Virus record (IMG/VR): IMGVR_UViG_3300028666_000022
Location: 186,001-250,000 of that record
DNA length: 64,000 bases
Strand: one strand, 5' to 3'
Shown here: positions 23,234 to 39,339 of the stretch, piece by piece
How positions within the stretch are numbered: position 1 is the first letter of the stretch
Layout of the letters: each line of letters opens with the position of its first letter
The notes under the pieces: model-generated
The model's input: only the letters and a program-made list of their open reading frames with translations
Told to the model about the DNA's origin: nothing
The model's database searches: none
Translations under genes and position numbers: made by a program

Positions 23234-24211
23234 TTATTTCTTATCTTTAAGAATATTCATCCAATTATTCACCATATCTTTCATTAATTCTTCCACTGTT
23301 TGTTCTGGTTTCCAATTAAGAATAGTTTTAGCTTTAGTTGCATCACCTCGCAAATATGGTAATTCTTCTGAACGTAAATATATTGGATTTTGTACAACAT
23401 AATCTTTATAGTCCATATCTAAATATTTAAATACCATATCACATATTTCTCTAATTGATGTTGCTATTCCTGTTGCAATTACAAAATCATCAGGAACTTC
23501 ATGATTTACTATTTTCCACATAGCTTTAACATAATCAACACTAGAACCAAAATCCCTATATGTATCTAAATTACCTAATTCAATATTTTTTCTTAATCCC
23601 AATTTAATTTCTACCGCTTGCTTACATATTTTTTGTTCAACAAAATTTGAACCCCTTCTTACACCAGTGTGGTTAAAGAGAATTCCCACACATGCATGTA
23701 AATTATATGCTCTTCTAAAATGACGAACTAAATTAATTGAAGCAACTTTACTTATTCCATAAGGACTTGTTGGATTAAAAGGGGTGGTTTCTCTTTGATA
23801 TAAATCTTCATCTACATTTAAACCAAATGATTCTGAGCTTCCAGCAAAATAATATTTAGCATCAGGACAAATTAATTTATATCCCTCTAAAATATTTTGA
23901 TTTCCCTTAAAATTAACATCCATTACATAGGTTGGCACGTCAAAACTGACTCGTACATGGCTCATAGCCGCTAAATTAAAAATATAATCAGGATTTGAGT
24001 TTTTTAAAAATCTATTAACTGATACTGAATCAGTAACATCGCCATATTCACAATGAATTAAATTTTTAATGTGTTCTAATCTATATTGTTGATTTTCGGC
24101 AACACTATGTCTTCTGACCATTCCATATATGTTATGACCCATCGATAATAAGTAATCAGTTAGGTTACTGCCGTCCATGCCTGAAATTCCAAACAATGCA
24201 ATATTACTCAT
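23234..24211 (-). CDS. gmd: GDP-mannose 4,6-dehydratase
   Basis: GISGMDGS, NLAAMSHVRVSF, GSSESFG, ETTPFNPTSPYGISK, GILFNH, LGNLDTYRDFG. Confidence 0.92.
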   Translation of the reverse strand: MSNIALFGISGMDGSNLTDYLLSMGHNIYGMVRRHSVAENQQYRLEHIKNLIHCEYGDVTDSVSVNRFLKNSNPDYIFNLAAMSHVRVSFDVPTYVMDVNFKGNQNILEGYKLICPDAKYYFAGSSESFGLNVDEDLYQRETTPFNPTSPYGISKVASINLVRHFRRAYNLHACVGILFNHTGVRRGSNFVEQKICKQAVEIKLGLRKNIELGNLDTYRDFGSSVDYVKAMWKIVNHEVPDDFVIATGIATSIREICDMVFKYLDMDYKDYVVQNPIYLRSEELPYLRGDATKAKTILNWKPEQTVEELMKDMVNNWMNILKDKK

Positions 24212-24238
24212 GTTTATATTATTTATAATTTAATTTTA

Positions 24239-25096
24239 TTAAGATGCTATATCTAAAGTATGTTTTTTACCACATCTTTTACATTTAAAAATTTCTAATT
24301 CAAATTTTTCTAAATTACGATGAATATCATCTATTAATTTTGTTTCAATAGGTTCATCATTTAACCAATCAATATCAGATTCTAAATTTAATAATTCTGG
24401 ACAAAAACACCAATCTGGATTATTCTTAATTTCTTCTTCTAATTGATATTTTTTTCTTATTTCTTTATTTAATTTCTTTTTGTTACTCATTTTATTATTT
24501 TTAAATATATCCATATTAGTTAAATCAGGCCAATCAGTAACAACCCATTGTTTAGGTGGAGTATTAATAGCATTATCTAATCTTTCTAATCCCAATTGTG
24601 CTGCTTCCGGTGTTAAATAATAGTGATAACCAATAGTATCAATATTTTGTTCTCTCCAAGGTATATCAGGTAATCTACCATCATATGAATTTTTTTTCAA
24701 TTCTAATGCAGCTTCTTTATTATCTGTTAAAATTATTCCAGCACGTCCAATTTTCAAATGTTTTCTATATTGGAAAGACAGTGACATGAAAGTATTTGGA
24801 ATATAACTATTTCTTTTCCAAAGAACTGCAGCATCAATTACTTTTTTAGTTAAATAATAATAATCAACCCAATTTTCATCTTTCCATTCTAAATTAATAT
24901 TTAATTTATGTGCTAAAAAGGGAATTGATAAATATGTTCTTTTAGGAACTGTTATTTTGGTTGCCTTTGTATGTCTTAAACATAATTCAATACCATGTGT
25001 ACATGAATCAACAGCAATTGCATATGGAGATCCAAAAAACTCACATATTTTATCTTCAAATAATTTTACTGTTTCAAAATTTATATTATTATTCAT
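24239..25096 (-). CDS. Short DegT/DnrJ/EryC1/StrS PLP aminotransferase with an unrelated C-terminal CxC/CxxC extension
   Basis: FEDKICEFFG, AVDSCTHGI, IDAAV, SFQYRKHLKIGRAG (PLP Lys), GYHYYL; second ATG at 24490 starts the extension. Confidence 0.8.
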   Translation of the reverse strand: MNNNINFETVKLFEDKICEFFGSPYAIAVDSCTHGIELCLRHTKATKITVPKRTYLSIPFLAHKLNINLEWKDENWVDYYYLTKKVIDAAVLWKRNSYIPNTFMSLSFQYRKHLKIGRAGIILTDNKEAALELKKNSYDGRLPDIPWREQNIDTIGYHYYLTPEAAQLGLERLDNAINTPPKQWVVTDWPDLTNMDIFKNNKMSNKKKLNKEIRKKYQLEEEIKNNPDWCFCPELLNLESDIDWLNDEPIETKLIDDIHRNLEKFELEIFKCKRCGKKHTLDIAS

Positions 25097-25112
25097 TAGG
25101 TTTTTAATGATT

Positions 25113-25292
25113 TTAATTATTTAAATCTCTATCTAATTCATTACTTATTTCAAACAATTGTTGATTATCACTCACCCAAATTTCCCGATAAATTTCATCA
25201 TTCAATTTTAAAATTAAATCACAATATAACTCAATACTTATTTGTTCACAATATAATATTTGTTCCTTATTTTCAACTAAATAATGAATCAT
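25113..25292 (-). CDS. Small acidic hypothetical protein (59 aa)
   Basis: Hand translation MIHYLVENKEQILYCEQ...QLFEISNELDRDLNN; below the ORF-track cutoff. Confidence 0.4.
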   Translation of the reverse strand: MIHYLVENKEQILYCEQISIELYCDLILKLNDEIYREIWVSDNQQLFEISNELDRDLNN

Positions 25293-25294
25293 TT

Positions 25295-25492
25295 TTAATC
25301 TTTATTATTATCTTTTTTCTGAAAATCACCATCTGCATCACAATGTGACGGAGGATATCCAAGCTTTTTCAAACTATAGTGACGTAAAATTCTTTGTATT
25401 ATATTATAAATACCAGTAAAGATACCACCAATTAAAAACATAAATCCTAACCAAATCCAAAAATCACTAAAAATAAATTTTAATTCTTCCAT
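25295..25492 (-). CDS. Small membrane protein
   Basis: One TM segment followed by GYPPSHCDADGDF. Confidence 0.6.
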   Translation of the reverse strand: MEELKFIFSDFWIWLGFMFLIGGIFTGIYNIIQRILRHYSLKKLGYPPSHCDADGDFQKKDNNKD

Positions 25493-25509
25493 AATAATAT
25501 ATTTTATAA

Positions 25510-25647
25510 TTAAATTTCAACTAATATTTCATCATTTTCTAATATAATTATATTTTTAATACGATTTTCTTCGCCAGTTTCATTATTTATTTCAGGTAAT
25601 GAATTTATTTTCTTTTTTAAATTTTTAATTGAAATACTATTTTCCAT
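25510..25647 (-). CDS. Small hypothetical protein (45 aa)
   Basis: Hand translation MENSISIKNLKKKINSLPE...EILVEI; fills the operon gap. Confidence 0.4.
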   Translation of the reverse strand: MENSISIKNLKKKINSLPEINNETGEENRIKNIIILENDEILVEI

Positions 25648-25659
25648 AATTATAATTTT

Positions 25660-26085
25660 TTATAAATATTCTTTTTTAAAAAATAATCTCTTATACCAAG
25701 ATAACTTAGAAAATTTATCTAATATTTTATTGGTATTATTTTTAATTATTTCATCTATTTCTTCTTGTTTTAATTTTTCGTGTTCTTCTTTTAAATTAGA
25801 TATTAAATCAATACTTTCTTCTAAAATTAAACACATTGTCCCATTATCAATAGCAATAGGAATTCGTTTTCCTTTTAATTTATTAAGATTATTCCACGAT
25901 ACAATATCACATTTAATATCATTAACTAAATCTTTACCGTAACTTATTTTGTGAGCTAATAATATTTTTTCACGATCATAATTTTTAACTCCATCAATCA
26001 TGAGTTTTGTATGTCCACATCCCCTTGTATTCAGATAATAGTCATATAATATTATAAGTTTTTCTAATGTTTTAGTTTCTTCCAT
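25660..26085 (-). CDS. Hypothetical protein
   Basis: 141 aa, TRGCGHT...PIAIDN. Confidence 0.55.
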   Translation of the reverse strand: MEETKTLEKLIILYDYYLNTRGCGHTKLMIDGVKNYDREKILLAHKISYGKDLVNDIKCDIVSWNNLNKLKGKRIPIAIDNGTMCLILEESIDLISNLKEEHEKLKQEEIDEIIKNNTNKILDKFSKLSWYKRLFFKKEYL

Positions 26086-26097
26086 GATAATTTATCA

Positions 26098-27821
26098 TTA
26101 AATAATATTATGTTCTCTTAAAATTTTCTCAATATTATCATAATCAAAATACGCAATTCTAATTAATTTAATATTTTTATCTTTAGCAAATTTATTTTTT
26201 ATTTCATCATTAATTTGTAGTTCTTTAAATTTTTCTTCTCCACCGAAATGTTTAATAATTTTATAATGTTGTATACCGTCAAATTCAATTAGAATGTTTT
26301 GTTCTGGTAAATAAAAATCAAATGGTAAAGATTTTTTATTTCTGCAATTTTCAAATTTTTTTTGATAAATAAAATTTATATTATTTTCTTTTAAAATTTC
26401 AGAAATTTTATTTTCACCCTTTGATTCGTTACATTTAGGACAACAATTATCACGATTTATAAAATTAATGTAACTTACATACCAAATATGATTATCTTTA
26501 TTACATCTTAAATGAATTTTTGTTTGATTATTTTTATATAAAAATTTTTCTATTAATTCATAATTTTTCTTTTTGCATTTATTTAGAACATTTTTTTCTG
26601 CTTCTTCTTGTGTTATTTTTAAAACATTAACACATTTAGAACATCCATGATCTTGACTCACAAAACTACTATAAATTGTTTTCCATATATAATTATCTTT
26701 TTTACATTTTAAATAAATAGTTGTTTCATTATTCACATATATAAAATTTTCAACTAATTCATAGTTTTTTTCTTTACATTTTTTCAAAACTTTTTCTTCA
26801 GCTTCTTGTTGTGTTATTTTTATACTATTTCCACATTTAGGACAACCTTGATTTTGATTAATAAAATTATCATATTTAACATTCCACACATAATTATCTT
26901 TATTACATTTTAAATGAATTTTTGTTTGGTTATTTTCATATGAAAAGTTTTCAACTAAGGTATAGTTTTTTTCTATACATTTTTTTCTGCTTCTCCTTGT
27001 GTTATTTTTGAAACATTACCACATTTAGGACATCCACTTTTATTATGAATAAAACTATCGTATGTTGGTGTCCATTTATACTCATCAATAGTACATTTTA
27101 AATGAATTTTTGTTTTTGTACCTTTATAAATAAATTTATCAAATAAAACATATTTTTTTTCTTTACATTTTTCTAAAACTCTTTCTTCGGCTTCTTGTTG
27201 TGTTATTTTTAAATTTCCATTACATTTAGGACAACCTTGATTTTTATTTATAAATTTATTATATCTTACAAACCATTCATGTTTATCTTTATTACATTTT
27301 AAATGAATTTTTGTTTTATGGTTTTTATAAATAAAATTTTCAACTAATATATAGTTTTTTTCTTTGCACTTTATTAAAACTTTTTTCTCTGCTTCTTCTT
27401 GTGTTATTAATGGTCTATTACCACATTTAGGACATCCACTTTTACTATGAATAAAACTATCATAAATTATATTCCATATATAATTATCTTTATTACATTT
27501 TAAGTGAATTATAGTATCGTTATTAACATATATAAAATTTTTAATTAATTCATAATTTTTTTCTTTACATTTCTCTAAAACTTTTTGTTCGGCTTCTTGT
27601 TGTGTTAATCTTAAGTTTCCACTACATTTAGGGCATCCTTGATTCTTACTAAGAAAATTATTATAAGTTACATACCAATCATACTTATCTTTGTTACATT
27701 TTAAATGAATTTTTGTTTTATTATTTTTATATGAAAAATTTTCAACAAGAATATAGTTTCTTTTCTCACACTTTTTAAAAACATTTTCTTCTGCTTCTTG
27801 TTGTGTTAATTTCTTTAACAT
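26098..27821 (-). pseudogene. Frameshift-split endonuclease: seven ~67-aa Zn-ribbon repeats plus C-terminal PD-(D/E)xK/Vsr-like nuclease
   Basis: ORFs 26973..27821 (4 CPKC repeats) and 26098..26889 (3 repeats + SKGENKI...LPFDFYLP...LIEFDGIQH) join in the -1 frame at the A7 run 26980-26986. Confidence 0.75.
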
Positions 27822-27855
27822 TAAATAATTTTAAACATAAATTTATTTTTAAATT

Positions 27856-28407
27856 TTAATAACAATATCCCAATTCCTTAGCCCCTTTTAATATTAATTC
27901 TTTATCTCTTTCACCTATTTTTCTTGCTGGACTTCCACCATAAATACACCACTGTTCAGTACTTTTTTTCAATAATGAATTTGCTGCTAAAACACTGCCC
28001 TCTGCCATTTCAACATAAGGTAATACAACAGAATTAACTCCCACTAATGAAAATCTTCTCATGATTATTTTATTACCAATAAGATTTCTATATTTTAATG
28101 GTACTATTGGATTTATTAATCCTTTTGTAAAATCATCACTTATAACCACAATTTTTGACCCCGATCCAATGTTTGTGAAGTCTTCCATAATTAATTCACC
28201 TGTAGGGCCACCTAGCACAGATACTCCATTTCCAATGTGTATATATGATCCTAATTCAGCAGAAACAGAAAAATAAACATATCCATCAATCGAAACATGA
28301 TTTTCAATTTCAACTAATTCTGGTTGTGTTATTTCACACCACTGATGGATTCTAACATCTTCACCAATTTTCTTAAAAAGATTATCATATCTATCGGTTC
28401 TTACCAT
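27856..28407 (-). CDS. Hexapeptide-repeat (LbH) acyltransferase
   Basis: IGEDVRI, HIGNGVSV, NIGSGSKI, VGVNSVVLP, YGGSPARKI. Confidence 0.85.
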   Translation of the reverse strand: MVRTDRYDNLFKKIGEDVRIHQWCEITQPELVEIENHVSIDGYVYFSVSAELGSYIHIGNGVSVLGGPTGELIMEDFTNIGSGSKIVVISDDFTKGLINPIVPLKYRNLIGNKIIMRRFSLVGVNSVVLPYVEMAEGSVLAANSLLKKSTEQWCIYGGSPARKIGERDKELILKGAKELGYCY

Positions 28408-29052
28408 TTAGATTCCTCCATCGATTTTTAAATTACTTCCACAAACATAATCATTTTCAATTAAAAAAACAATGGTTTTAAATAATTCTTCAACAGTACA
28501 AAATCTTTTTAAACCTATTTTATTTTTCGCCATTTCAATAAATTTCTCATCTACTTTTTCACCCATTCCATATTCTGTATACCCCAATTGAATTGTATTA
28601 CATGTTATTCCATATTTAGCATTTTCTTTATTTGCTGTACTTATTAATCTATCTAAAAATGCTTTTGAAGCACAATATATTGAATTCTTTGGAATGTTTT
28701 GTTCAGAAAATACTGACGATATTGCAATTATTTTACCACTTTTCTTTTCAATCATTCTAGGTAAACAAGCAGCTAATATATTAATATTTCCCATGATATT
28801 AACATTTAACATATCAATAATTGATTGATAATTATCTTCATTAATATCATTTAAAAATACATCAAATTTTTTACCAGATAAATTCAAAACAATATCAACA
28901 TCGTTGACTTCAAAAAAATGTTGTACTTGTTTTAAATTAGTAACGTCAACAATTTTACTACTTATTGCAAGTACTTCATAATTTTCCTTCAATAATGGAA
29001 TTAATTTAGAACCTAAACCACCTGTTGCACCAAAAACAGCAATTGTTTTCAT
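28408..29052 (-). CDS. Short-chain dehydrogenase/reductase (FabG-like)
   Basis: GATGGLG, NVNIMG, AISS, YCASK, GITCNTIQLG, IDGG. Confidence 0.85.
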   Translation of the reverse strand: MKTIAVFGATGGLGSKLIPLLKENYEVLAISSKIVDVTNLKQVQHFFEVNDVDIVLNLSGKKFDVFLNDINEDNYQSIIDMLNVNIMGNINILAACLPRMIEKKSGKIIAISSVFSEQNIPKNSIYCASKAFLDRLISTANKENAKYGITCNTIQLGYTEYGMGEKVDEKFIEMAKNKIGLKRFCTVEELFKTIVFLIENDYVCGSNLKIDGGI

Positions 29053-29058
29053 AAAATT

Positions 29059-29871
29059 TTATATATTATTTAATATAATATTCCATGTTGGTGTAATATT
29101 CAGAAAAGAACTAACATTATTTTCAATAAATTCATCATCAATATATTTAGTATGATTAAATATTACCATTTTCTCATCAACATATAATTTATTATTATAT
29201 TTTTTGGCATTAAATTGGATATACCATGCACCACATTGGTATACATTATCAACAATTTTTATTTTTAATTTTTCATGTGTTATTTTTGAGATCATCCATT
29301 GAATCCCAGCATGATGTGAATTAATTTTTACAAATTCATCCCACTCTAAAATTATATTATCTCTTAGTTTAAGAAATGTTTTTTTATTTCCAATCAAAAT
29401 CGATCCAGTAAATTCATTAAAAATTTTTAAATATTCAAATTGTTCAGAATTAATAAAATTTAAATTTTTTGTAACGTCATATAATGTCATAGGTGGATTA
29501 GCAGAATAAACAGAAATAATTTGATCTTCTTCTGGTATTAAATTATTTAATTCAATATCTGTCATTTCTCGTTGCATTATTGTATCTGCATCAATCTGAA
29601 TTATTACGTCATCATCAGAACAATTTAAATAATCAATAAATTCACCACCTTGTGGACAAACAAAATCACATCTATTTTTTGGATAATCAGAACGATACGT
29701 ATAAATTCTTTTTCTTTCCATTAAATAATATTCACCAATATAATCATTAGGTAAAAAATCAATAAATCCAACAACAAATCTGTCTTTCCAATATTTTTTT
29801 ACTGAATCAAATAATGGTTTTGATTTTTCATAATAACTACTTGTTACTTGCGTTGTTAATATAAATTTCAT
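29059..29871 (-). CDS. Putative glycosyltransferase-like protein
   Basis: IIQIDAD (DxD), FTGSILIG; cluster context. Confidence 0.5.
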   Translation of the reverse strand: MKFILTTQVTSSYYEKSKPLFDSVKKYWKDRFVVGFIDFLPNDYIGEYYLMERKRIYTYRSDYPKNRCDFVCPQGGEFIDYLNCSDDDVIIQIDADTIMQREMTDIELNNLIPEEDQIISVYSANPPMTLYDVTKNLNFINSEQFEYLKIFNEFTGSILIGNKKTFLKLRDNIILEWDEFVKINSHHAGIQWMISKITHEKLKIKIVDNVYQCGAWYIQFNAKKYNNKLYVDEKMVIFNHTKYIDDEFIENNVSSFLNITPTWNIILNNI

Positions 29872-29922
29872 TTTTTATATATAATATTTCTAATTAACCT
29901 AATGATCATATTAATAATATTT

Positions 29923-30618
29923 TTATCTAGGCTTTGGATATTTAGTTTCTCCCACAACATCTAAAATATCTACATTATTCCAATCAAAATTATTAACATC
30001 AGCTATTTTTTTACCTAAATATTCACTATGACAATATAATCCACCAACTGGTCTATTTCTCAAATATTCATCAGCTAATAATGAAAATCTTCCAACAATT
30101 GGATTTGACATACCTGCCTCAATACATTCAAAACCAAGTGCTTTTGAAAATAAACACTTTAATGCCATATCACTAAATTGAAAAAAATGCCAAGGTCTTT
30201 CATGTGAAGAAAAAGAAAAATGTGTTTCAATCATTACAATTCCCCCAATTTTTAATAATTTAGAAATTTCTATAGCAACAATCCAAGGCATTGCAAAATG
30301 TTCAAAACACGCACTACTGAATATTATGTCAAATTTTTCATCTTCATTAAAATATGAAGAAAGTTTATGTGCATCACCAACAACATCAACATTTTTTCCT
30401 GCATAAAAATCAAATCCAACATATTCTGCATTAGAAAATTTATTTCTATTTTTAGCGTTAGTTACTTCACGACTCCCCACTTCTAATATTCTCATTCCAC
30501 TTTTATTCCCAATAGAATATAAATAATTTTGCCATTTAGAATGATTAATTGTTTCTGATAGAGGAACATCTGGTGCTAGAAATTGTCTATCATAAAATAC
30601 GTTATTTTGATTTTCCAT
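29923..30618 (-). CDS. Class I SAM-dependent methyltransferase
   Basis: ILEVGSR, YVGFD, VDVVGDAH, FDIIFSSACFEH, LLKIGG. Confidence 0.85.
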   Translation of the reverse strand: MENQNNVFYDRQFLAPDVPLSETINHSKWQNYLYSIGNKSGMRILEVGSREVTNAKNRNKFSNAEYVGFDFYAGKNVDVVGDAHKLSSYFNEDEKFDIIFSSACFEHFAMPWIVAIEISKLLKIGGIVMIETHFSFSSHERPWHFFQFSDMALKCLFSKALGFECIEAGMSNPIVGRFSLLADEYLRNRPVGGLYCHSEYLGKKIADVNNFDWNNVDILDVVGETKYPKPR

Positions 30619-30649
30619 TGTTAGTTTATTTTAAAATTTAAAATTATTT

Positions 30650-31027
30650 TTATTTGATTATATTAAGTTTTGAAGTTATGTTTTTATGTTTCTTTCTATG
30701 TTTAAGAACACGATATGTTGGTACTTCAAACTCTTTTCTTTTGAAGACTCTTTTCACCATTTTTTTACATAATTCTTTTATTTCTTTATTATTGAGTTCA
30801 TATTTTGATTTTAATATTGAATATATTTTATGATAACTAACATGTATTTCATTATTATCTAAATCATATGTTAAATACCATTCTCCTTTTCTGTAAGATT
30901 CAATTATCCCATCATTTATATTATCTTCTAAAATTATTTCTTTAAATTCTGATTGTTTAAATGATTTCAATAAAAATTTACTTGCTTCCTGAATATTTAT
31001 TTCGTTTTTCATATTATGAATAATCAT
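30650..31027 (-). CDS. Hypothetical protein
   Basis: 125 aa, overlaps the MT-A70 stop. Confidence 0.5.
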   Translation of the reverse strand: MIIHNMKNEINIQEASKFLLKSFKQSEFKEIILEDNINDGIIESYRKGEWYLTYDLDNNEIHVSYHKIYSILKSKYELNNKEIKELCKKMVKRVFKRKEFEVPTYRVLKHRKKHKNITSKLNIIK

Positions 31028-31599
31028 AATTTTATACTATTTTCCACTTCATTTCCGAAAACGTCCCAACCTTCTGTTTGTTGCCTTGCAAACAATTCAA
31101 CACGAGGTAAATCACCCATTAATTCAATTATTCTTTCTCTAAAAATATCTGGCTTCTTAGAATGTTTTTCATTTAAAGCAAATATTGTTTCTTCGTTAAA
31201 TTCTTCTTCAGCTAACTGAACAGATCTTATACCATGATTAATTACTTTAGGTTTTCCTTTAGTTGCAATTAAACAAAATTCTGATAATTGCCTTGAATAA
31301 AACCCCATTCCAAAACCAAGTTTATCATTTTTGGTTGTTTTAACCCAATTGAATCCTGACATTGTTTTTACCTTAAAACCCCAAGATTTAACAACTCTAA
31401 GTGCTTCTTCTGGTTGTGATGCCACCCACCACATAAATAAAATACAATCATCTGCAGCTATTTCACTTACTGGTAAATTACAAATTTCATCAACAGTCAT
31501 GGTTTTATATTGTGCTTCAGAACCACTTTTCATACTACCACCAGTATTTTTATTATTAAAACTCCAAGGACAATCAGCGTATATGATAGAATATTTCAT
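31024..31599 (-). CDS. MT-A70 family adenine methyltransferase
   Basis: YSIIYADCPW (DPPW variant), LFMWW, WGF, WVK, GMGFY, HSKKP, RVELFAR, GWDVFGNE. Confidence 0.88.
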   Translation of the reverse strand: MKYSIIYADCPWSFNNKNTGGSMKSGSEAQYKTMTVDEICNLPVSEIAADDCILFMWWVASQPEEALRVVKSWGFKVKTMSGFNWVKTTKNDKLGFGMGFYSRQLSEFCLIATKGKPKVINHGIRSVQLAEEEFNEETIFALNEKHSKKPDIFRERIIELMGDLPRVELFARQQTEGWDVFGNEVENSIKL

Positions 31600-31613
31600 G
31601 ATAATATTTTTAA

Positions 31614-31877
31614 TTAAGATATTTCTGATTGAATAACTTGACCCACATTATATTCATCTAATGTATATTTCAAAAAAAATGTGGAATTATCTAATGGATT
31701 AACAATTTTCCAATCTTCTAAATATCTATTCCACATTTTTTTATAATATAAATTACTTGATTTATTAATTCGATTTTTAAAATATTTTAAAAGATATTCG
31801 TGTGCTTTGATTTTATCTTCTGCCATCACAAAATATTCTTCACCATGATCGTTTGGATTAAAATGATATTGTTTCAT
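31614..31877 (-). CDS. Hypothetical protein
   Basis: 87 aa; TAATTTTG box at 31900-31907 upstream. Confidence 0.5.
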   Translation of the reverse strand: MKQYHFNPNDHGEEYFVMAEDKIKAHEYLLKYFKNRINKSSNLYYKKMWNRYLEDWKIVNPLDNSTFFLKYTLDEYNVGQVIQSEIS

Positions 31878-31933
31878 AATTTTATTATTAATGTTCTCAC
31901 AAAATTAAATAAATTATAATTAATATCCTAGTT

Positions 31934-32869
31934 TTATTTAAAATATTTTATAATTGATACTCCCCATGTCCAACCTGAACCTACTGCTGGCATAATTAGA
32001 ATATCACCATTTTTTATTTTATTTTCTCGATATAATCCATCTAATGCCATTGGTATTGAAGCACCTGCAGAATTACCATATTTAATCATATTTAAAACTA
32101 CTTTTTCGATTGGTAGTCGAAGTATTTCTGCAGTTTTAATAAGAACATTAATACTTGGTTGATGTGGAATTAGCCAAGAAATGTCTTCAACACTTAAGTT
32201 ATTTTTATTTAAAGAATCTAATATTGTATATGGTAATGTTTTTGTAGCAAATTCAAAAACTGCTTTTCCATTCATTTGAAATGTTTCACCGTGATGACAA
32301 GTAAAAATATCTTTTCCTATGCCATCACCATAAATATCAGTACTTATCCAACCACCTTCTGTTTCAGAAATAATTATACTTCCAGAACCATCGCCAAAAA
32401 ATACGCAATTCCGATCACTCCAATCAGTAATTTTAGAATATGTTTCTGAAGCAACCAACAATATATTTTTATATTGTTTTGTTTGAATTAAATTAGTTGC
32501 TAATTGCATTCCATACACAAAACCAGAACAAACTGCATTAATATCAAATGCTGGACAAGTTATATCTAATTTTGACATTAAAATACATGCTGTTGAAGGA
32601 GATATTCTTTCAGGACTTGAGGTAGCAAATATTATTAAATCGATTTGATTTTTATTTAAACCACTATCTTCAATTGCATTTAATGCTGCTCTATATGCTA
32701 AATCTGAATTACTTTCTTCTAAGACAACATGTCTTTCTTCAATACCTAATTTATTTTTAGTCCACTCAGGATTTGTATTTTTATTTATTAAATAAACTTC
32801 TTCGTTATTTAACGTTTTTAATGGAACATATGATCCAATGCCTTTTATTCCAACATTGTTTATTTTCAT
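31934..32869 (-). CDS. fabH: 3-oxoacyl-ACP synthase III (KAS III)
   Basis: GIGSYVP, GIEER, AFDINAVCSGF (Cys), FGDGSG, IPHQPS (His), YGNSAGASIP (Asn), GSGWTWG. Confidence 0.92.
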   Translation of the reverse strand: MKINNVGIKGIGSYVPLKTLNNEEVYLINKNTNPEWTKNKLGIEERHVVLEESNSDLAYRAALNAIEDSGLNKNQIDLIIFATSSPERISPSTACILMSKLDITCPAFDINAVCSGFVYGMQLATNLIQTKQYKNILLVASETYSKITDWSDRNCVFFGDGSGSIIISETEGGWISTDIYGDGIGKDIFTCHHGETFQMNGKAVFEFATKTLPYTILDSLNKNNLSVEDISWLIPHQPSINVLIKTAEILRLPIEKVVLNMIKYGNSAGASIPMALDGLYRENKIKNGDILIMPAVGSGWTWGVSIIKYFK

Positions 32870-33703
32870 TTATTTTCTGGAATTAAAATATTTTATTATT
32901 ATATTTCTATAAAATTCATTGGCAATAAATTTTTCATCTTTTGAAATAAATTCAAACTTAAAAAAATTATTAGAACATGTTGAAAATGCAATTGGAATTG
33001 GTGATTTAAGATCAACAAAATCTATTGGGTATTCATCACCAATGTTTTCTAAACCAAGAATATTTAATATTTGATTAGTCATATGAATAAAAACATATGA
33101 TGTAGGATGACTTGCATATAGAAATAATCTTTTCTTGCTTATATTTTCTTTTATATAATCATGTACTTTTATATCGGTATATTTATCTTTTTCTTTTAAA
33201 ATCTTCATTGTTTTATCATGTCTTTCATCATAATTAAAATCAATTTGATTATTATCATATTTCAATAAAATTTCATTCAATGATAAACCAGATTTTATTA
33301 AATCATCAATAATTTCGATATTTTTAGTAACACTATTATACCCATCCCTATTGCACCATTCATCAGTAACATCTCCATTAAGTGCAGGTACTAAAGGCCA
33401 TAAACTAAAATTATATACATAAGGTATTGAGATTGTTATACATGTTGATTTCAATAATGACTTCAAATAATTTGTTGAATTTTTACCATATCTATCGTCT
33501 AATGGTTGATAAATAAAAACATCTGTATCTCTTAATGAAGTATAATATTTGTCAATTAATATTTCATCATTATGAATCATTTGATAGTTACGAACAACGT
33601 CAGTAATATTATATTTATCTCTAAATTCTTGACTTTCATTAAGAAATTTAGCAATTGCTCCACCTTGGCAAGTAGCAAATATAAAAACATTTAATTTATT
33701 CAT
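32870..33703 (-). CDS. WcbI-family polysaccharide acetyltransferase-like protein
   Basis: FATCQG, DVFIYQP, LFLYASHPT match the WcbI NCQ...HP pattern. Confidence 0.7.
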   Translation of the reverse strand: MNKLNVFIFATCQGGAIAKFLNESQEFRDKYNITDVVRNYQMIHNDEILIDKYYTSLRDTDVFIYQPLDDRYGKNSTNYLKSLLKSTCITISIPYVYNFSLWPLVPALNGDVTDEWCNRDGYNSVTKNIEIIDDLIKSGLSLNEILLKYDNNQIDFNYDERHDKTMKILKEKDKYTDIKVHDYIKENISKKRLFLYASHPTSYVFIHMTNQILNILGLENIGDEYPIDFVDLKSPIPIAFSTCSNNFFKFEFISKDEKFIANEFYRNIIIKYFNSRK

Positions 33704-34124
33704 TTAAAAACACTTTATCTAGCTTCTGTCCTTGATATTTCCCCGTTTTCATTTCCAGTACTTTCGTTTTATCTTCTAATATAGTATAGGTATGTCCACC
33801 TCTTAAAGTAAAGCTACAATCACCTTCTTCAAGTATTGATTCAGCAATTATATTATCATCAATATCATAGAAAGTACATTTAACCTTTCCTCTTAAAACA
33901 ACCCATGATTCTTGAGCAATTCTATCATTATCGGTTACTTCTCTTATTATGTGTTTATGTGGCCTAAATGTTTTACCTTTATCCATTTTAAGTGCTGCAC
34001 ATTGAATAAAATTATCTGGTTCAATTATTTCAAACCTAAAATCATCCATTTTATCAAAATCATCAAATCTATATATCACATGTAATAAAAGATTAGGATC
34101 TACTTTTGAGAATATTTTTTCCAT
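33696..34124 (-). CDS. Cupin-fold protein (WbuC/sugar isomerase-like)
   Basis: FRPHKH...QESWVVLRG...GGHTY...EMKTG. Confidence 0.7.
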   Translation of the reverse strand: MEKIFSKVDPNLLLHVIYRFDDFDKMDDFRFEIIEPDNFIQCAALKMDKGKTFRPHKHIIREVTDNDRIAQESWVVLRGKVKCTFYDIDDNIIAESILEEGDCSFTLRGGHTYTILEDKTKVLEMKTGKYQGQKLDKVFLNE

Positions 34125-34132
34125 TTAATTTA

Positions 34133-35626
34133 TTATATTAAAAAATCTTTATATATTTCATTATATTTTTGAAGATTAGATGTAGTGCGTTTCACAATAA
34201 AACCATATTCTGGCGAAATATAAAATGTATCCCAAACACTGCCCCAATCTAAATAAGTATTTTTATTATCTGTTTTAAAATAATCAATAATCACATTAGT
34301 TGCCATGCTTGCACTAAATAAATAATAATTATCATTACCTAATTTATTTATGTTTTCAATTGCATTAATAATTTCTTGTTTAGCTAAATAACAATTTATT
34401 GTTGGTATACTAATGTGGGTAAAATTAAAAAATTTGCTTAATTTCTCTAAATATTGTGGTCCAATCAATACTAATTTTTTTGTTTTTAATACGTCTAATA
34501 ATTTTAGGTATTTTTCTGGACTTTGTTCATGGGTAATCCTAATAAAATCATAGTTTAAATATGATAATTGTGGATTTTTATTTTTTAGATCATTTAAAAT
34601 ATTTTTTACGTGAGGGAGTTGAGCATACCAATAATCAAAAGATTCTAAAACATAATTTTCATCATGAACATAATTTAATAATGCATTTTTTAATTCAATC
34701 GACATTTCTGGAAAATATACATGACCATCACAATTAGCGTTATTTGGAGTTTCACCAATTATTGCAATTAATTCACCATCATTATATCTTGAATATTTAA
34801 AATGTTCATTATTTTTAATTTTATTAAAATAATAATCAAAATCTTTTGTATAAAACATATTATTTATTATTTGTTTTATTTTCATATTTGGTTCAGGAAT
34901 TCTCTCACAAAGACCAACATTTGTTGTTATATTTATTTGTATTAATTTTTCTTCTGCTAATATTCTATAAAAATTTTTTGCATCATTTTTTTGAATTTCA
35001 TCTATATTTGAAACAGTTGCACGAGTTTTACTACTGTGATGAATAATCGGAGAACTATAAACTAAAGCAACATTATAACCAGCATTTACTGTTTTTGCAA
35101 AAACATAATCATCACCACCAAAAATTATTAATTCTTTTGGTATTTCTGGCATTATGTTTCTTCTTATTGTAAAATCCCAACCCTGATAATATACTGGATC
35201 TAATATCTTATATTCTAACGTGCTCTTAGTTTCAATATAATTAGGATTATTTGTTACATGTATAACAAAACCAACTTGTGTTTCTAAATTAAAAACATTA
35301 ATAGTATCATCAATAAATTTATTAGATAATTCAACATCGTTATTTAAAAAACACAAAAATTCACATAAACAAATATTTTTAAAATTATTCCAAATATGAT
35401 TAAGTGGTACATTCTCAGAATTTCTAAGTACGATAATTTTATTGCTTTCACAATAATTTAGAAAATCTTGAGTACCTTCTTCACTAGAATTTTGATCATA
35501 TAAATATATTTCAAAATTTTTATTTGTTTGATTTAATAAATCATATATACACTTCTTTGTTAATTGAAGTTGATTTAAATTTACTACAACAACTCCAATT
35601 TTATTTTTTTGAATTTCACTATTCAT
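34133..35626 (-). CDS. Two-domain glycosyltransferase (GT2 plus a second, possibly GT-D-like, domain)
   Basis: YDQNSSE, FLNNDV, FGGDD; second half KYSRYNDGE...SASMAT...LDWGSVWD. Confidence 0.75.
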   Translation of the reverse strand: MNSEIQKNKIGVVVVNLNQLQLTKKCIYDLLNQTNKNFEIYLYDQNSSEEGTQDFLNYCESNKIIVLRNSENVPLNHIWNNFKNICLCEFLCFLNNDVELSNKFIDDTINVFNLETQVGFVIHVTNNPNYIETKSTLEYKILDPVYYQGWDFTIRRNIMPEIPKELIIFGGDDYVFAKTVNAGYNVALVYSSPIIHHSSKTRATVSNIDEIQKNDAKNFYRILAEEKLIQINITTNVGLCERIPEPNMKIKQIINNMFYTKDFDYYFNKIKNNEHFKYSRYNDGELIAIIGETPNNANCDGHVYFPEMSIELKNALLNYVHDENYVLESFDYWYAQLPHVKNILNDLKNKNPQLSYLNYDFIRITHEQSPEKYLKLLDVLKTKKLVLIGPQYLEKLSKFFNFTHISIPTINCYLAKQEIINAIENINKLGNDNYYLFSASMATNVIIDYFKTDNKNTYLDWGSVWDTFYISPEYGFIVKRTTSNLQKYNEIYKDFLI

Positions 35627-36458
35627 GTTTAGCTAAATTTAAAATATAATTATATTCAAATAATTCTTTTAATTGTGTTTTATAATCAGGAACAATAATA
35701 TTAATGTTATTACGTATTGTAATTAATGAACGATCACATTTTATTGGTGTCCTGAGTGGAATAACATTTACATTTAATTTATATGTTTCAGAAACTAATT
35801 TAACTAAATCATATTTATTTATTGAATTTTCAGTAAAAACATGTTTTACTCCTTTCCAAAACATATTTTCATTAATTATGTCTTCACATATTTTTACAAA
35901 TTCTAAACAAGTAATGCCATTCCAAATATGATTAGTATACCCGTTTACTGTCTTATTTTTATTTGATTTAACAAATTCAATAAAAGACATTTTATTTTTT
36001 AATTCTTCACCAATTATTGAAGTTCGAATAACAGTTGCATTTGATGGTTCGCCCAATGCTTTTGTTTTTCCATAAACATCTATTGCATTTGTAGAATCTT
36101 CTTCTGAATATTTACCACGTAAACCATCAAAACAACAATCTGAACTAGGTTGTAGCATATTAACCTTAAATAATTCACAAATATTAGCTAATTTTCGTGG
36201 AAAAACAGAATTAATATTAATAAAATCTAAATCATCAATTCCATTTCTTTGTTTTATTATTCCAATACAATTAATTACCACATCTCCAACATTAATATCT
36301 TTATTTTTTAATACTAACATAATATCACTAGAATTTGTTAAAGATAAATCATTAAAATCTTTTCTGTTTATATCAATAACATCAAAATTTTTTAATTTAA
36401 AATATGTACTAACATATCTTCCTAACATTCCGGTACTGCCAAATACAAAAATTTTCAT
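35619..36458 (-). CDS. RmlD-like NDP-4-keto-6-deoxysugar reductase
   Basis: GSTGMLG, INCIG, SSDCCFDG, YGKTK, IRTSIIG. Confidence 0.85.
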   Translation of the reverse strand: MKIFVFGSTGMLGRYVSTYFKLKNFDVIDINRKDFNDLSLTNSSDIMLVLKNKDINVGDVVINCIGIIKQRNGIDDLDFININSVFPRKLANICELFKVNMLQPSSDCCFDGLRGKYSEEDSTNAIDVYGKTKALGEPSNATVIRTSIIGEELKNKMSFIEFVKSNKNKTVNGYTNHIWNGITCLEFVKICEDIINENMFWKGVKHVFTENSINKYDLVKLVSETYKLNVNVIPLRTPIKCDRSLITIRNNINIIVPDYKTQLKELFEYNYILNLAKHE

Positions 36459-36464
36459 AATAAA

Positions 36465-37460
36465 TCATTTTTTTAAAAAACCACCATTCATTAGTAATTT
36501 ATAAAGATAATTCTCATCTTTAATATTGTCTGCTGATGAAAATTCTATAAAATTAACTTTTTTATTTTTTTCTATATGTGAATAATCTTTATTTATTTTT
36601 ATTGAAGGTAAAATTATAAAATAATTTTCATTAAAAATATAAGATTTTTGAGATTCATGTTCTGATATTAATACTTCATGTATTTTTTCACCTTCTCTTA
36701 TACCAACTTCCTCAATAATAGTATCTTTATTACCATAATAATCAACCAATGCTTTACCCAAATCTTTAATATAAAAACTAGGCATATTCATAACAAACGT
36801 TTCTCCACCAATACTATTTTCAACTGCTTGAAATAATAATTCAATTGCTTCTGAAAGTGTTAAGAAAAATCTTGTCATTATGTTACTAGTTATAGTAATT
36901 TTATTATTCGTTTTGATTTGATCAATAAAATATGGCACAACACTACCATTAGATCCTAAAACATTTCCACCTCTTATACAAACAAAATTAGTATCAGTTG
37001 TTAAATTATTTGCTTGAATTGTTAATTTTTCACCAACTGCTTTAGTTAATCCATATAAATTATTTGGACTGACCGATTTATCTGTTGATACATCAATAAA
37101 ATATTTTATTTTATATTTAATTGCTGAATTAATTAAATTAATTGTACCATTTATATTTGTTTTAATTGCTTCTTGGGGTAAATTTTCACAAATAGGAACA
37201 TGTTTAAGTGCAGCTAAATGAAAAACATAATCAATATTGTTATTACTAAACAATCTATCTACTGCTTCAGCATCTCTAATATCACCAATAACATATTCAA
37301 TTATTTTATTATTAAATTTTCTTTGCATATTTACCTGCGCAAATTCACCTCTTGAAAAAATTATTATTTTCTTAGGATTTTTTAATAATAATTGTTTTGT
37401 TAATTCGTTTCCCCATGAACCAGAACCACCATCAATTAATATTGTTTTATTTTTAAACAT
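36465..37460 (-). CDS. UDP-GlcNAc 4,6-dehydratase (FnlA/CapE/PseB family)
   Basis: GGSGSWG, IIFSRGE, IGDIRD, HLAALKHVP, STDKS, YGLTK, RGGNVLGSNGSV, MTRFFL, GEKIHE. Confidence 0.88.
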   Translation of the reverse strand: MFKNKTILIDGGSGSWGNELTKQLLLKNPKKIIIFSRGEFAQVNMQRKFNNKIIEYVIGDIRDAEAVDRLFSNNNIDYVFHLAALKHVPICENLPQEAIKTNINGTINLINSAIKYKIKYFIDVSTDKSVSPNNLYGLTKAVGEKLTIQANNLTTDTNFVCIRGGNVLGSNGSVVPYFIDQIKTNNKITITSNIMTRFFLTLSEAIELLFQAVENSIGGETFVMNMPSFYIKDLGKALVDYYGNKDTIIEEVGIREGEKIHEVLISEHESQKSYIFNENYFIILPSIKINKDYSHIEKNKKVNFIEFSSADNIKDENYLYKLLMNGGFLKK

Positions 37461-37463
37461 AGA

Positions 37464-38234
37464 TTATATTTTAATAAAATTCGGATATTTTATTACCCAT
37501 TCTTTTAATTCTTTATGATTTACTTCTTCTAAAGAAACGAATCTTTTTTTAAAGATTTCATCATTTCTATTAAATAGATCAATACCACTTTCCAAACATT
37601 TTATAATATGTTCTTCATTATTTATTTCAACATTATTTGTTTGTATTTCAGAATATGATTCTAATTTTAATTTAATTCTATCTTTATCACCAAGAAAACT
37701 ATAATGCCAACCACCATTATTAATTATCTTAATATCTCTACCACTAAATAAACGAGTATCTTGTGGTGATTTTACGTATTTTTTCTTGATTACTACTGTA
37801 CCAAACCATTCTTGATTTTGTATGCAATTCACATAATAATAAAACAATTTTTGTTTTAATTTAAAAATATCATAATTATTATTAATTCCTTCTAATATTG
37901 CATCTGGATTAGGAATTTCATCAACATCTGAAATAATAATATAATCATTGTCATTTGCTGAACTTAAACCTTGAATAATTAGATTTCTATTATAGAACTC
38001 ATTTTCCCATGCATCACTATATGGTAATTTATCTACACTAATATAAATTATCTTATCTGAATATTTTTCAAATAAATTTTTATTCTTTTCATAATACATT
38101 TCTTTTTCATTTCCAGTAAATGTTGTTCCTGCTTCAACTAATACAAAATAATCAACCACATTATATAATGTCATCAACCTAAGTTCTAATAACTCAAGTT
38201 CATTAAAAAATATAAAACAGTCAAAAATTTTCAT
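37464..38234 (-). CDS. Glycosyltransferase family 17 (GlcNAc-transferase-like)
   Basis: IFDCFIFFNELELLELR, VDYFVLVEA, TFTG, ISDVDEIP, GGWHYSF. Confidence 0.85.
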   Translation of the reverse strand: MKIFDCFIFFNELELLELRLMTLYNVVDYFVLVEAGTTFTGNEKEMYYEKNKNLFEKYSDKIIYISVDKLPYSDAWENEFYNRNLIIQGLSSANDNDYIIISDVDEIPNPDAILEGINNNYDIFKLKQKLFYYYVNCIQNQEWFGTVVIKKKYVKSPQDTRLFSGRDIKIINNGGWHYSFLGDKDRIKLKLESYSEIQTNNVEINNEEHIIKCLESGIDLFNRNDEIFKKRFVSLEEVNHKELKEWVIKYPNFIKI

Positions 38235-38240
38235 AAAAAT

Positions 38241-39317: not shown

Positions 39318-39339
39318 AATATTTTAAATTTTATTATAT

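What the first reader, a model, noticed from the sequence alone, without database searches (positions are those of the whole stretch)
26098..27821. Seven-repeat zinc-ribbon nuclease with hypervariable positions in each repeat
Seen: ~67-aa (~201-nt) repeats with scaffold TQxEAExxVxxKCxxKNYxLxxxFxYxxxxTxIHLxCxKDxxxWxxxYxxFxxxxxGCPKC. Variation concentrates in two patches (KNNK/VNND/KNHK/KGTK/ENNQ/VNNE/KNNQ and VTYNN/IIYDS/VRYNK/PTYDS/VKYDN/TIYSS/VSYIN), followed by a Vsr/PD-(D/E)xK-like nuclease. Inference: a modular DNA-reading array whose specificity can be reshuffled by recombination between repeats, potentially programmable.
Basis: partly seen in the sequence, partly recalled or inferred. 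Interest (0 to 1): 0.6.

Follow-up and report, generated by a model that had tools for sequence, protein, structure and literature searches.

The report
Broken seven-finger phage homing endonuclease
This is a selfish "homing endonuclease" gene of a 340-kb T4-like soil phage: seven tandem zinc-finger DNA-binding repeats joined to a Vsr-type DNA-cutting domain. It belongs to a large, already described family, and in this genome a 13-base deletion has broken it.

Summary
The repeats are real. On the minus strand there are seven in-register 201-nt (67-aa) units, followed by a 108-aa nuclease domain. Each unit is a CapR-homology / DUF4379 zinc finger, the DNA-binding module of phage homing endonucleases. 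The nuclease is Vsr-like, of the EDxHD family whose prototype is I-Bth0305I, and its catalytic residues are present.

The gene is free-standing and mobile. Four related phage contigs lack it at the syntenic locus, and a fifth carries a 61%-identical copy at a different intergenic site.

Seven repeats is not unusual. Relatives with the same architecture carry 2 to 10 repeats, and other proteins carry up to 14. This genome also holds two intact paralogues, with 7 and 5 repeats.

The "two hypervariable patches" claim holds only weakly. Those 9 positions carry 21% of the variability, and at least 20 of 67 positions vary. The most variable stretch lies on the strand after the first zinc knuckle, which I infer to be exposed.

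In this genome a 13-nt deletion between 8-nt direct repeats frameshifts repeat 5. Another rhizosphere sample keeps those 13 nt, which gives one 578-aa ORF. A further assembly carries a second, 53-nt deletion. The gene is therefore decaying.

Modular, recombining CapR arrays were already proposed in 2023. This is a new member of a known kind, and its DNA-reading rules are untested.

The parts
27618..27818 (-). Repeat 1 (CapR-homology zinc finger, type A). The ATG start codon is at 27821-27819.
27417..27617 (-). Repeat 2 (type B)
27216..27416 (-). Repeat 3 (type A)
27015..27215 (-). Repeat 4 (type B)
26827..27014 (-). Repeat 5 (type A), only 188 nt. It is broken by the 13-nt deletion, so the reading frame changes inside it.
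26973..26984 (-). Deletion scar and premature stop. One copy of the 8-nt direct repeat AAAAATGT remains (26977-26984, minus strand). The TAG that ends ORF1 is at 26973-26975. In run X2, 13 nt (minus strand TTTAGAAAAATGT) sit between 26976 and 26977.
26626..26826 (-). Repeat 6 (type B)
26425..26625 (-). Repeat 7 (type A)
26592..26644 (-). Stretch of 53 nt that is deleted in an independent assembly (L014). The deletion lies between 11-nt direct repeats ATGTTCTAAAT. The stretch is present in this window.
26101..26424 (-). Vsr-like (EDxHD) nuclease domain, 108 aa. Conserved residues, numbered in the 242-aa model, are E138 (26413-26415), D170 (26317-26319), E181, D183, H187 (26266-26268), D207 (26206-26208) and K210. 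The stop codon is at 26098-26100.

Best explanation
This is a free-standing homing endonuclease gene (HEG) of a 340-kb T4-like jumbo phage from rhizosphere soil.

The intact protein is 578 aa. It has seven tandem 67-aa CapR-homology/DUF4379 zinc fingers, each with zinc ligands C41-x2-D44 and C62-x2-C65. Type A and type B repeats alternate, so the unit of duplication was a 402-nt pair. A C-terminal Vsr-like nuclease of the EDxHD family follows.

Inferred mechanism: the finger array lies along a long stretch of DNA and holds the nuclease on a target in a related phage that lacks the gene. The target probably lies in or near the conserved sugar-modification genes that flank the HEG. The cut is repaired from the HEG-carrying genome during co-infection, which copies the HEG and its neighbouring markers into the recipient.

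In this genome the gene is inactivated. A 13-nt deletion between two AAAAATGT direct repeats in repeat 5 shifts the frame and stops translation after 282 aa.

Shown here: the repeats, the domain identities, the fold, the presence of the catalytic residues, the patchy and position-variable distribution among relatives, and the series of alleles.
Inferred: DNA binding by the array, site-specific cleavage, homing, and the location of the target.
For: Domain identity:
- Pfam CapR 97.4 bits against a cut-off of 24.2, plus DUF4379 and DUF723.
- PHROG 559/681/9084/7140, labelled 'HNH/homing/intron-encoded endonuclease', with E down to 1e-63.

Fold:
- AF2 model of repeat 6 + repeat 7 + nuclease, pLDDT 97.
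- The nuclease aligns to Vsr 1cw0_A (Z 11.2, rmsd 2.6 A, 103 residues) and to the I-Bth0305I catalytic domain 3r3p_B (Z 10.6, 92 of 98 residues).

Catalytic residues:
- E138, D170, E181, D183, H187, D207 and K210 are conserved in 106-136 of 145 relatives, and all are present here.
- The D170-H187 spacing of 17 equals the D196-H213 spacing in I-Bth0305I.

Zinc site:
- C41, C62 and C65 are nearly invariant.
- Position 44 is D, C or H in 956 of the roughly 1070 repeats with a residue there.

Mobility:
- Four related contigs (L019-L022) keep the order KASIII-Hexapep-x-DegT-epimerase with no HEG.
- L015 has a 61%-identical 5-repeat HEG two genes away, between KASIII and SDR.

Host genome: a 339,898-bp record with terminal repeats and a T4 gp23-type capsid gene at E 1.6e-64.

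Breakage is real, not an assembly error:
- The same 13-nt-deleted allele appears in contigs of runs X3, X4 and X5 and in an ENA assembly.
- The X2 contig (432 nt, 26894-27312, no other differences) carries the 13 nt. Placing them gives one 578-aa ORF.
- L014 adds a 53-nt frameshifting deletion.
- The microhomologies are 8 and 11 nt, which I reason is too short for an assembler to join on.

Literature: CapR is a zinc-finger DNA binder derived from phage HEGs. Free-standing HEGs sit between conserved genes and cut at a distance from their own gene.
Against: No activity of any kind was tested, and the target site is unknown.

The intact allele is documented by a single low-depth contig (depth about 5) that covers only 26894-27312. 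Window 27366-27555 was not covered in X2 by any listed piece, and the only listed piece at 27313-27365 comes from a diverged relative (8 differences in 80 nt). Whole-gene intactness in that sample is therefore not proven.

The nearest relative is only 61% identical, so no recent homing event can be reconstructed.

The homodimer prediction for the nuclease domain gave no verdict.

The frameshifted allele dominates the samples examined. That would also fit a selected truncated product.
Confidence: 0.8

Rival explanations
1. One reading: the array is a modular, code-like DNA reader. Each repeat (or A/B pair) would read a fixed few base pairs through a handful of variable residues, so that shuffling or editing repeats re-programmes the target, as in TALE or C2H2 arrays.
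For: - Variable positions 47, 49 and 51 alternate with the invariant W48 and Y52 and the hydrophobic position 50 on the strand after the first zinc knuckle. I infer that they share an exposed face with the conserved basic K36 and K/R40.
- The same positions are among the most variable across 1073 family repeats. Within-array and family-wide variability correlate at rho 0.53.
- Repeat number varies from 2 to 14 in relatives.
- Exact tracts of up to 34 nt are shared between repeats.
- The nuclease is 79% identical in DNA to a paralogue whose array is of a different subtype. This indicates domain swapping.
- A similar idea has been published.
Against: - Repeats are only 52-67% identical, and at least 20 of 67 positions vary.
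- dN/dS is about 1 at positions picked after the fact, which gives no sign of positive selection.
- No positional orthology of repeats with the nearest relatives was found.
- In I-Bth0305I the flanking DNA-binding modules contribute mainly non-specific contacts.
- No repeat-DNA structure exists.
Confidence: 0.12
2. The frameshifted allele is functional. ORF1 (four zinc fingers, no nuclease) would act as a stand-alone DNA-binding protein, either as a repressor or as a protector of the target site. This would parallel the domesticated CapR of the PLE satellite.
For: - The truncated allele is the one found in the source assembly, in three other runs and in an ENA assembly.
- ORF1 keeps four complete fingers that fold with high confidence, pLDDT 95.5.
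- There is a precedent: CapR is an HEG-derived DNA-binding domain used as a repressor.
Against: - A second frameshifting deletion downstream is what neutral decay predicts. It is uninformative about ORF1.
- No independent truncations were seen at the same point in relatives.
- There are no expression data. No RNA run holds the locus.
Confidence: 0.1
3. The full-length protein is still made from the deleted allele. This would happen by a -1 ribosomal frameshift or by transcriptional slippage on the A-run (GCA GAA AAA AAT GTA TAG) just before the stop.
For: - The required shift is -1.
- The heptamer A AAA AAT lies in the right phase, two codons before the stop.
- The product would lack only about 4 residues of the helix of repeat 5.
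Against: - The genome is about 79% A+T here, so A-runs are everywhere.
- The motif is just the ordinary AEKN codons of every repeat.
- No stimulatory downstream structure was sought or seen.
- The additional 53-nt frameshift in L014 argues for decay.
Confidence: 0.04
4. It is a nuclease used for something other than its own spread. Examples would be excluding competing phages or degrading host DNA, with the array giving affinity rather than a unique target.
For: - Three members of the family sit in one genome, two of them intact.
- I-Bth0305I tolerates most single substitutions in its site.
- HEGs are known to cause marker exclusion between related phages.
Against: - The patchy, position-variable presence among syntenic relatives is the signature of a mobile element.
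- Ready loss of function in nature argues against an essential role.
Confidence: 0.08

Closest known systems
I-Bth0305I and the EDxHD (Vsr-like) homing endonuclease family, which includes the Hef-type free-standing endonucleases of T4-related phages (PMC3239194)
   Same: - C-terminal Vsr-fold nuclease (Z 10.6 to 3r3p_B, 21% identity).
- The same D...H spacing and the conserved acidic residues.
- N-terminal DNA-binding modules with a C-terminal nuclease.
- A phage host.
   Different: - I-Bth0305I is encoded in an intron. This gene is free-standing.
- I-Bth0305I binds DNA through two NUMOD/helix-turn-helix motifs. This protein has seven zinc-finger repeats.
- Dimerisation and target are unknown here.
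CapR-domain T5orf172 homing endonucleases of ICP1, T5 (orf141), the Vibrio phage Helene and others, and PLE CapR (PMC8096241, PMC10448857)
   Same: - The same zinc-finger DNA-binding repeat (Pfam PF21817).
- Tandem 'beads on a string' arrays of up to 6 repeats have been reported.
- Deletions and duplications by recombination between repeats.
- Swapping of arrays and nuclease domains.
   Different: - The nuclease is Vsr-like rather than T5orf172/GIY-YIG-like.
- The first knuckle is C-x2-D rather than C-x2-C.
- There are seven repeats.
- The deletions seen here are out of frame.
Metagenomic and phage relatives with the same architecture, for example P0129 (590 aa, 7 repeats), P0126 (663 aa, 8 repeats) and P0001 (444 aa, 5 repeats, 61% identity). 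JGI annotates them as 'very-short-patch-repair endonuclease'.
   Same: N CapR repeats followed by a nuclease of about 108 aa. There are 2562 relatives at E<=1e-10 within the 145-460 aa length range alone.
   Different: Sequence and repeat number only. Most relatives have 3 to 5 repeats.
Klebsiella jumbo phage RaK2 gp420 and Muenster gp353, annotated 'endonuclease'
   Same: - Tandem CapR repeats 42-47% identical to these.
- Free-standing, between uvsX and uvsY in a jumbo myovirus.
- Repeat number differs between sister phages, 4 against 3.
   Different: - A different C-terminal domain, which I did not examine further.
- Fewer repeats.
C2H2 zinc-finger arrays and TALE repeats
   Same: Tandem small DNA-binding modules. 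Variation lies partly on a presumed contact surface.
   Different: - An unrelated fold.
- Much less uniform repeats.
- No known residue-to-base rule.
- No structure with DNA.

Membership tests
CapR homology / DUF4379 / DUF723 zinc-finger repeat | Match to the curated profile above its cut-off | tested here: met
   PF21817 scores 97.4 bits (cut-off 24.2) with 4 stretches in ORF1 and 37.9 bits in ORF2. PF14311 scores 70.1 bits and PF05265 scores 52.7 bits.
CapR homology / DUF4379 / DUF723 zinc-finger repeat | Two pairs of zinc ligands (CxxC ... CxC/CxxC) | tested here: met
   C41-x2-D44 ... C62-x2-C65 is present in all seven repeats. In 1073 family repeats position 44 is D in 520, C in 363 and H in 73, all of which can bind zinc. 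C41, C62 and C65 are nearly invariant. This is a variant of the published CxxC...CxC. Metal binding itself was not tested.
CapR homology / DUF4379 / DUF723 zinc-finger repeat | Sequence-specific DNA binding | not testable with these tools
   Known only for PLE CapR. No solved complex with DNA exists.
EDxHD (Vsr-like) homing endonucleases | Vsr-type nuclease fold | tested here: met
   Model pLDDT is 97. Vsr 1cw0_A gives Z 11.2, I-Bth0305I 3r3p_B gives Z 10.6, and Foldseek probability is 0.99 for both.
EDxHD (Vsr-like) homing endonucleases | Composite catalytic motif E, D, H, D | tested here: met
   E138, D170, H187 and D207 are present and are conserved in 126-136 of 145 relatives. The D-to-H spacing of 17 matches I-Bth0305I D196/H213. 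The residue correspondence rests on spacing and conservation. It was not checked on superposed coordinates.
EDxHD (Vsr-like) homing endonucleases | Homodimer through the nuclease domains | tested here: inconclusive
   Complex prediction on two copies of the nuclease domain returned no verdict.
EDxHD (Vsr-like) homing endonucleases | Site-specific cleavage and homing | not testable with these tools
   There is only indirect support. The gene is absent from 4 syntenic relatives and sits at another site in a fifth.
Free-standing phage homing endonuclease gene | Intergenic position between genes conserved among relatives, with patchy presence | tested here: met
   The gene lies between the hexapeptide acetyltransferase gene and small ORFs inside a conserved sugar-gene cluster. 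L019-L022 lack it, and L015 has it between KASIII and SDR.
TALE-like array with hypervariable code residues | Near-identical repeats that differ at only a few fixed positions | tested here: not met
Repeats are 52-67% identical in protein. The 20 most variable positions are spread over the whole unit.

The most novel reading that the evidence does not exclude
CapR-type fingers, perhaps as A/B pairs, may read DNA additively through the inferred exposed face of the knuckle hairpin (positions 38, 47, 49 and 51, with help from 31/33/34 and 53/54). Natural arrays of 2 to 14 repeats would then be a third kind of modular, re-programmable protein DNA reader, already fused to a nuclease. This locus, with its intact and broken alleles and two paralogues carrying different arrays on nearly the same nuclease, would be a convenient entry point.
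Probability: 0.1. Interest if true: 0.75.

Novelty: new member of a known kind. Interest (0 to 1): 0.3.

Why it matters
For genome annotation, this is an ordinary selfish element, and a pseudogene in this genome. It should not be annotated as two separate genes.

Two points have wider use.

First, the locus gives a clean natural series for one phage population: an intact allele, a 13-nt deletion, and a 13-nt plus 53-nt deletion. All the deletions lie at short direct repeats inside the array. This documents how repeat-rich homing endonuclease genes decay once they have nothing left to cut.

Second, arrays of 7 to 14 CapR fingers turn out to be common in metagenomes, yet no structure or specificity rule exists for this finger. 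That is a real gap. If the fingers prove additive, they could become a compact protein-only targeting scaffold.

Tried and rejected
I searched the two ORFs separately instead.
- A sequence search of the PDB, with the single protein and with a 145-sequence profile, found no relative for the nuclease. It gave only weak DUF4379 hits in kinetoplastid mitoribosome factors. The nuclease had to be identified by fold.
- An exhaustive fold search with the 4-repeat model found nothing above Z 5.8 and no DNA complex. The DNA-facing side of the repeat therefore could not be established. I also had no access to the model coordinates, so my statement about the exposed hairpin face rests on the strand periodicity of conservation, not on measured distances.
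- Complex prediction for a nuclease-domain homodimer gave no verdict (score 0.00). This is neither evidence for nor against dimerisation.
- Nei-Gojobori dN/dS gave 0.31 for the scaffold and about 1.0 for the variable patches. The patches were chosen because they vary and the codons are extremely AT-rich, so this is not a test of positive selection.
- I looked for positional orthology of individual repeats with the nearest relatives and found none. Each repeat's best match is another repeat of the same array, at 67-72% against 64-69% outside it.
- Searching IMG/VR with ORF2 gave only distant loci at 34-36% identity.
- The Hef paper (PMC1275590) is not held. Hef's membership in the family is quoted from the I-Bth0305I paper.
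- An NCLDV capsid search was negative, but it had no positive control. The phage assignment rests on the gp23 hit.
Full report
**What is there**

The feature lies on the minus strand. Tandem Repeats Finder reports a 201-nt period (6.9 copies, 26431-27812) and a stronger 402-nt period. Translating the minus strand shows seven units whose TQxEAE anchors are exactly 201 nt apart. The exception is the fifth to the sixth, which are 188 nt apart.

The units are 52-67% identical in protein and 70-81% in DNA. Odd repeats resemble odd repeats and even resemble even, so the array is (A-B)(A-B)(A-B)A. After repeat 7 comes a 108-aa domain and then the stop at 26098-26100.

The gene is not intact in this window. 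ORF1 (26973-27821, 282 aa) ends at a TAG inside repeat 5. The remainder is open in another frame.

**What the parts are**

Each repeat is a CapR homology domain. PF21817 scores E 5.6e-28 and overlaps DUF4379 ('probable treble clef zinc finger') and DUF723. PHROGs places both ORFs in endonuclease, homing endonuclease and intron-encoded nuclease families.

CapR is the DNA-binding zinc-finger module of phage homing endonucleases. Mutating its cysteine pairs abolishes DNA binding (PMC8096241).

In an alignment of 1073 repeats from relatives, C41, C62 and C65 are nearly invariant. Position 44 is D (520), C (363) or H (73), so the zinc site here is C-x2-D ...

An AlphaFold2 model of repeat 6 + repeat 7 + C-terminal domain has pLDDT 97. 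Its C-terminal domain superposes on:
- Vsr endonuclease 1cw0_A: Z 11.2, rmsd 2.6 A, 103 residues.
- The I-Bth0305I catalytic domain 3r3p_B: Z 10.6, 92 of 98 residues, 21% identity.

E138, D170, E181, D183, H187, D207 and K210 are conserved in 106-136 of 145 relatives, and all are present here. The D170-H187 spacing equals that of D196 and the general base H213 of I-Bth0305I. The nuclease therefore belongs to the Vsr-like 'EDxHD' homing endonuclease family. That family also contains the Hef-type free-standing endonucleases of T4-related phages.

**Where it lives**

The window is positions 186001-250000 of a 339,898-bp IMG/VR virus record with direct terminal repeats, estimated 100% complete. 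GC content is about 24%. The record encodes a T4 gp23-type major capsid protein at E 1.6e-64, so it is a T4-like jumbo phage. All public runs that hold the locus are rhizosphere metagenomes.

The gene sits in an intergenic slot of a sugar-modification cluster. It follows a hexapeptide acetyltransferase gene and precedes four small ORFs and a DegT-like gene.

**It behaves as a mobile, free-standing homing endonuclease gene**

Four related phage contigs (L019-L022) keep the order KASIII, acetyltransferase, one gene, DegT, epimerase. Their proteins are 46-71% identical to this phage's, and none has an endonuclease gene at the locus.

A fifth relative (L015) has the closest homologue: P0001, 444 aa, 5 repeats, 61% identity. 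It lies two genes away, between KASIII and the SDR gene.

[quoted passage not shown] Those enzymes cut a conserved gene at some distance from their own gene (PMC2988022).

**The break is real and recent**

Repeat 5 lacks 13 nt. Contigs of three other runs (X3, X4, X5) and an ENA assembly (L014) carry the same deleted allele.

A contig of run X2 (432 nt, window 26894-27312, no other differences) carries 13 extra nt between 26976 and 26977. On the minus strand these read TTTAGAAAAATGT. They complete the helix of repeat 5 (…AEKNVLEKCIEKNY…) and turn the region into a single 578-aa ORF.

The deletion removed one copy of the direct repeat AAAAATGT plus the 5 nt between the two copies. L014 is otherwise identical to the window over 2.8 kb, but it has a second deletion of 53 nt (window 26592-26644) between 11-nt direct repeats. 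That deletion is also out of frame.

Microhomologies of 8 and 11 nt are, by my reasoning, too short for an assembler to join on. These are therefore biological deletions.

One caveat applies. The intact allele rests on a single contig at depth about 5. In X2, window 27366-27555 was not covered by any listed piece, and 27313-27365 only by a piece from a diverged relative.

The picture is a homing endonuclease gene in the decay phase of its life cycle.

**Is a seven-finger array unusual? No**

The family is very large:
- Phage GenBank records with a tblastn match: 548 for ORF2 and 386 for ORF1.
- The word search found 2562 proteins at E<=1e-10 in the 145-460 aa length range.
- The exhaustive search of cluster representatives found 6555 at E<=1e-3.

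I counted repeats with an HMM built from these repeats. Among the 255 proteins fetched, those with the same architecture (repeats followed by a C-terminal nuclease of about 110 aa) split as follows:

| Repeats | Proteins |
|---|---|
| 2 | 8 |
| 3 | 43 |
| 4 | 69 |
| 5 | 35 |
| 6 | 15 |
| 7 | 8 |
| 8 | 4 |
| 9 | 1 |
| 10 | 2 |

Other architectures reach 14 repeats: P0139 has 1041 aa.

RaK2 gp420 has 4 repeats and its sister phage Muenster has 3 at the same site. T5 orf141 has 2.

The same genome also holds two intact paralogues:
- G000:C1:142724-144424: 566 aa, seven repeats of the DUF723/DUF4379 subtype with C-x2-H ... C-x2-C ligands. Its nuclease is 79% identical in DNA to this one.
- G000:C1:121182-122468: 428 aa, five repeats.

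Nearly the same nuclease on an unalignable array is direct evidence of domain swapping.

**The 'hypervariable patches'**

The most variable windows are 47-51 and 56-60. The linker and positions 15 and 23 vary as much as the patches.

Variability within the array tracks variability across the family, with rho 0.53.

In the model, 36-41 and 47-51 form the hairpin that carries the first zinc knuckle. Positions 47, 49 and 51 vary, while W48 and Y52 are fixed and position 50 stays hydrophobic. On the partner strand, K36 and K/R40 are conserved basic residues and I37 and L39 are hydrophobic. From this periodicity I infer one exposed, partly basic, partly variable face, which is a reasonable DNA-contact surface. 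I could not check this on coordinates.

No solved structure of this finger with DNA exists. The best fold matches are DUF4379 domains of kinetoplastid mitoribosome factors, at Z 5-6.

dN/dS is about 1 at the variable positions and 0.31 on the scaffold. The positions were chosen after the fact.

The 4-repeat model has pLDDT 95.5 and pTM 0.60. It has confident linkers inside the r1-r2 and r3-r4 pairs and a dip between the pairs. This fits a two-repeat structural unit.

**Comparison with what is known**

Barth, Nguyen and Seed (2023, PMC10448857) reported all of the following:
- T5orf172 homing endonucleases commonly carry several CapR/DUF723/DUF4397 fingers 'like beads on a string'.
- Such modularity could diversify targets.
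- Repeats recombine, for example an in-frame 228-bp deletion in ICP1 gp174.
- Arrays and nuclease domains are exchanged.

What differs here is the Vsr-like nuclease partner, the C-x2-D knuckle, and the fact that the recombination seen at this locus destroys the gene.

For I-Bth0305I, the only characterised enzyme with this nuclease, most specificity lies in the 14 bp under the nuclease dimer. The flanking modules add mostly non-specific contacts over a footprint of about 60 bp. That is a caution against assuming the array sets the target. However, those modules are helix-turn-helix motifs, not zinc fingers.

**Verdict**

The object is a new member of a known and very populous kind, and it is a pseudogene in this genome. 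The modular-reader idea is plausible, already in the literature, and untested. Nothing here shows a simple code.

I rate interest at 0.3. The value lies in the allele series and in pointing to an unstudied DNA-binding finger that nature uses in arrays of up to 14.

Noticed in passing
G000:C1:142724-144424 (L017:1225-2925, minus) and G000:C1:121182-122468 (L018:1183-2469, minus), outside the window: Two intact paralogues of the same endonuclease family sit in this phage. One is 566 aa with seven DUF723/DUF4379-type fingers (C-x2-H...C-x2-C), and its nuclease is 79% identical in DNA to the window's. The other is 428 aa with five fingers.
   Followed up: partly
window 61149-62681 (minus): A 510-aa ORF matches PHROG 3339 'homing endonuclease' (E 1.1e-90), PHROG 559 and Pfam DUF7487. 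It shares only a short CxxC-plus-helix-plus-'IExxG' stretch with the nuclease studied here (BLASTP E 3e-4). It is probably another free-standing endonuclease gene.
   Followed up: partly
window 3959-6820 (minus): A 953-aa DnaB-like replicative helicase is interrupted by a LAGLIDADG_3 domain at residues 450-507. It is probably an intein with its own homing endonuclease.
   Followed up: no
window about 23234-42869 (minus): A long single-strand cluster of sugar-nucleotide and glycan genes: GDP-mannose-dehydratase-like epimerase, DegT-like aminotransferase, hexapeptide acetyltransferase, SDR, methyltransferases, MT-A70, KASIII and several glycosyltransferases. It is conserved in part in related jumbo-phage contigs, so the phage probably makes or modifies a glycan.
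   Followed up: partly
window 24239-25096 (minus): The DegT-like ORF is only 285 aa. Relatives align to residues 2-198 only, and Pfam covers only a small N-terminal part of the 360-position profile. The C-terminal part, about 87 aa ending in a CxxC, is unmatched. Between this gene and the acetyltransferase gene, relatives have one gene of about 275 aa, whereas this phage has the endonuclease plus four small ORFs.
   Followed up: no
window 25630/27837 (run X2) and 26622/27286 (run X4): Two weak contig joints were seen. The X2 joint skips 2206 nt, which would remove the endonuclease gene and the 141-aa ORF (depth 34, only 20 nt on the short side). The X4 joint skips 663 nt inside the array, has 79 other letters between the two sides, and shows 8 mismatches. 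They may come from HEG-less or shorter-array relatives, but they are too weak to count as evidence.
   Followed up: no
G000:C1:299326-300744 (minus), outside the window: A T4 gp23-type major capsid gene lies in a 565-aa open frame. It matches Pfam Gp23 in two pieces separated by about 340 nt.
   Followed up: no
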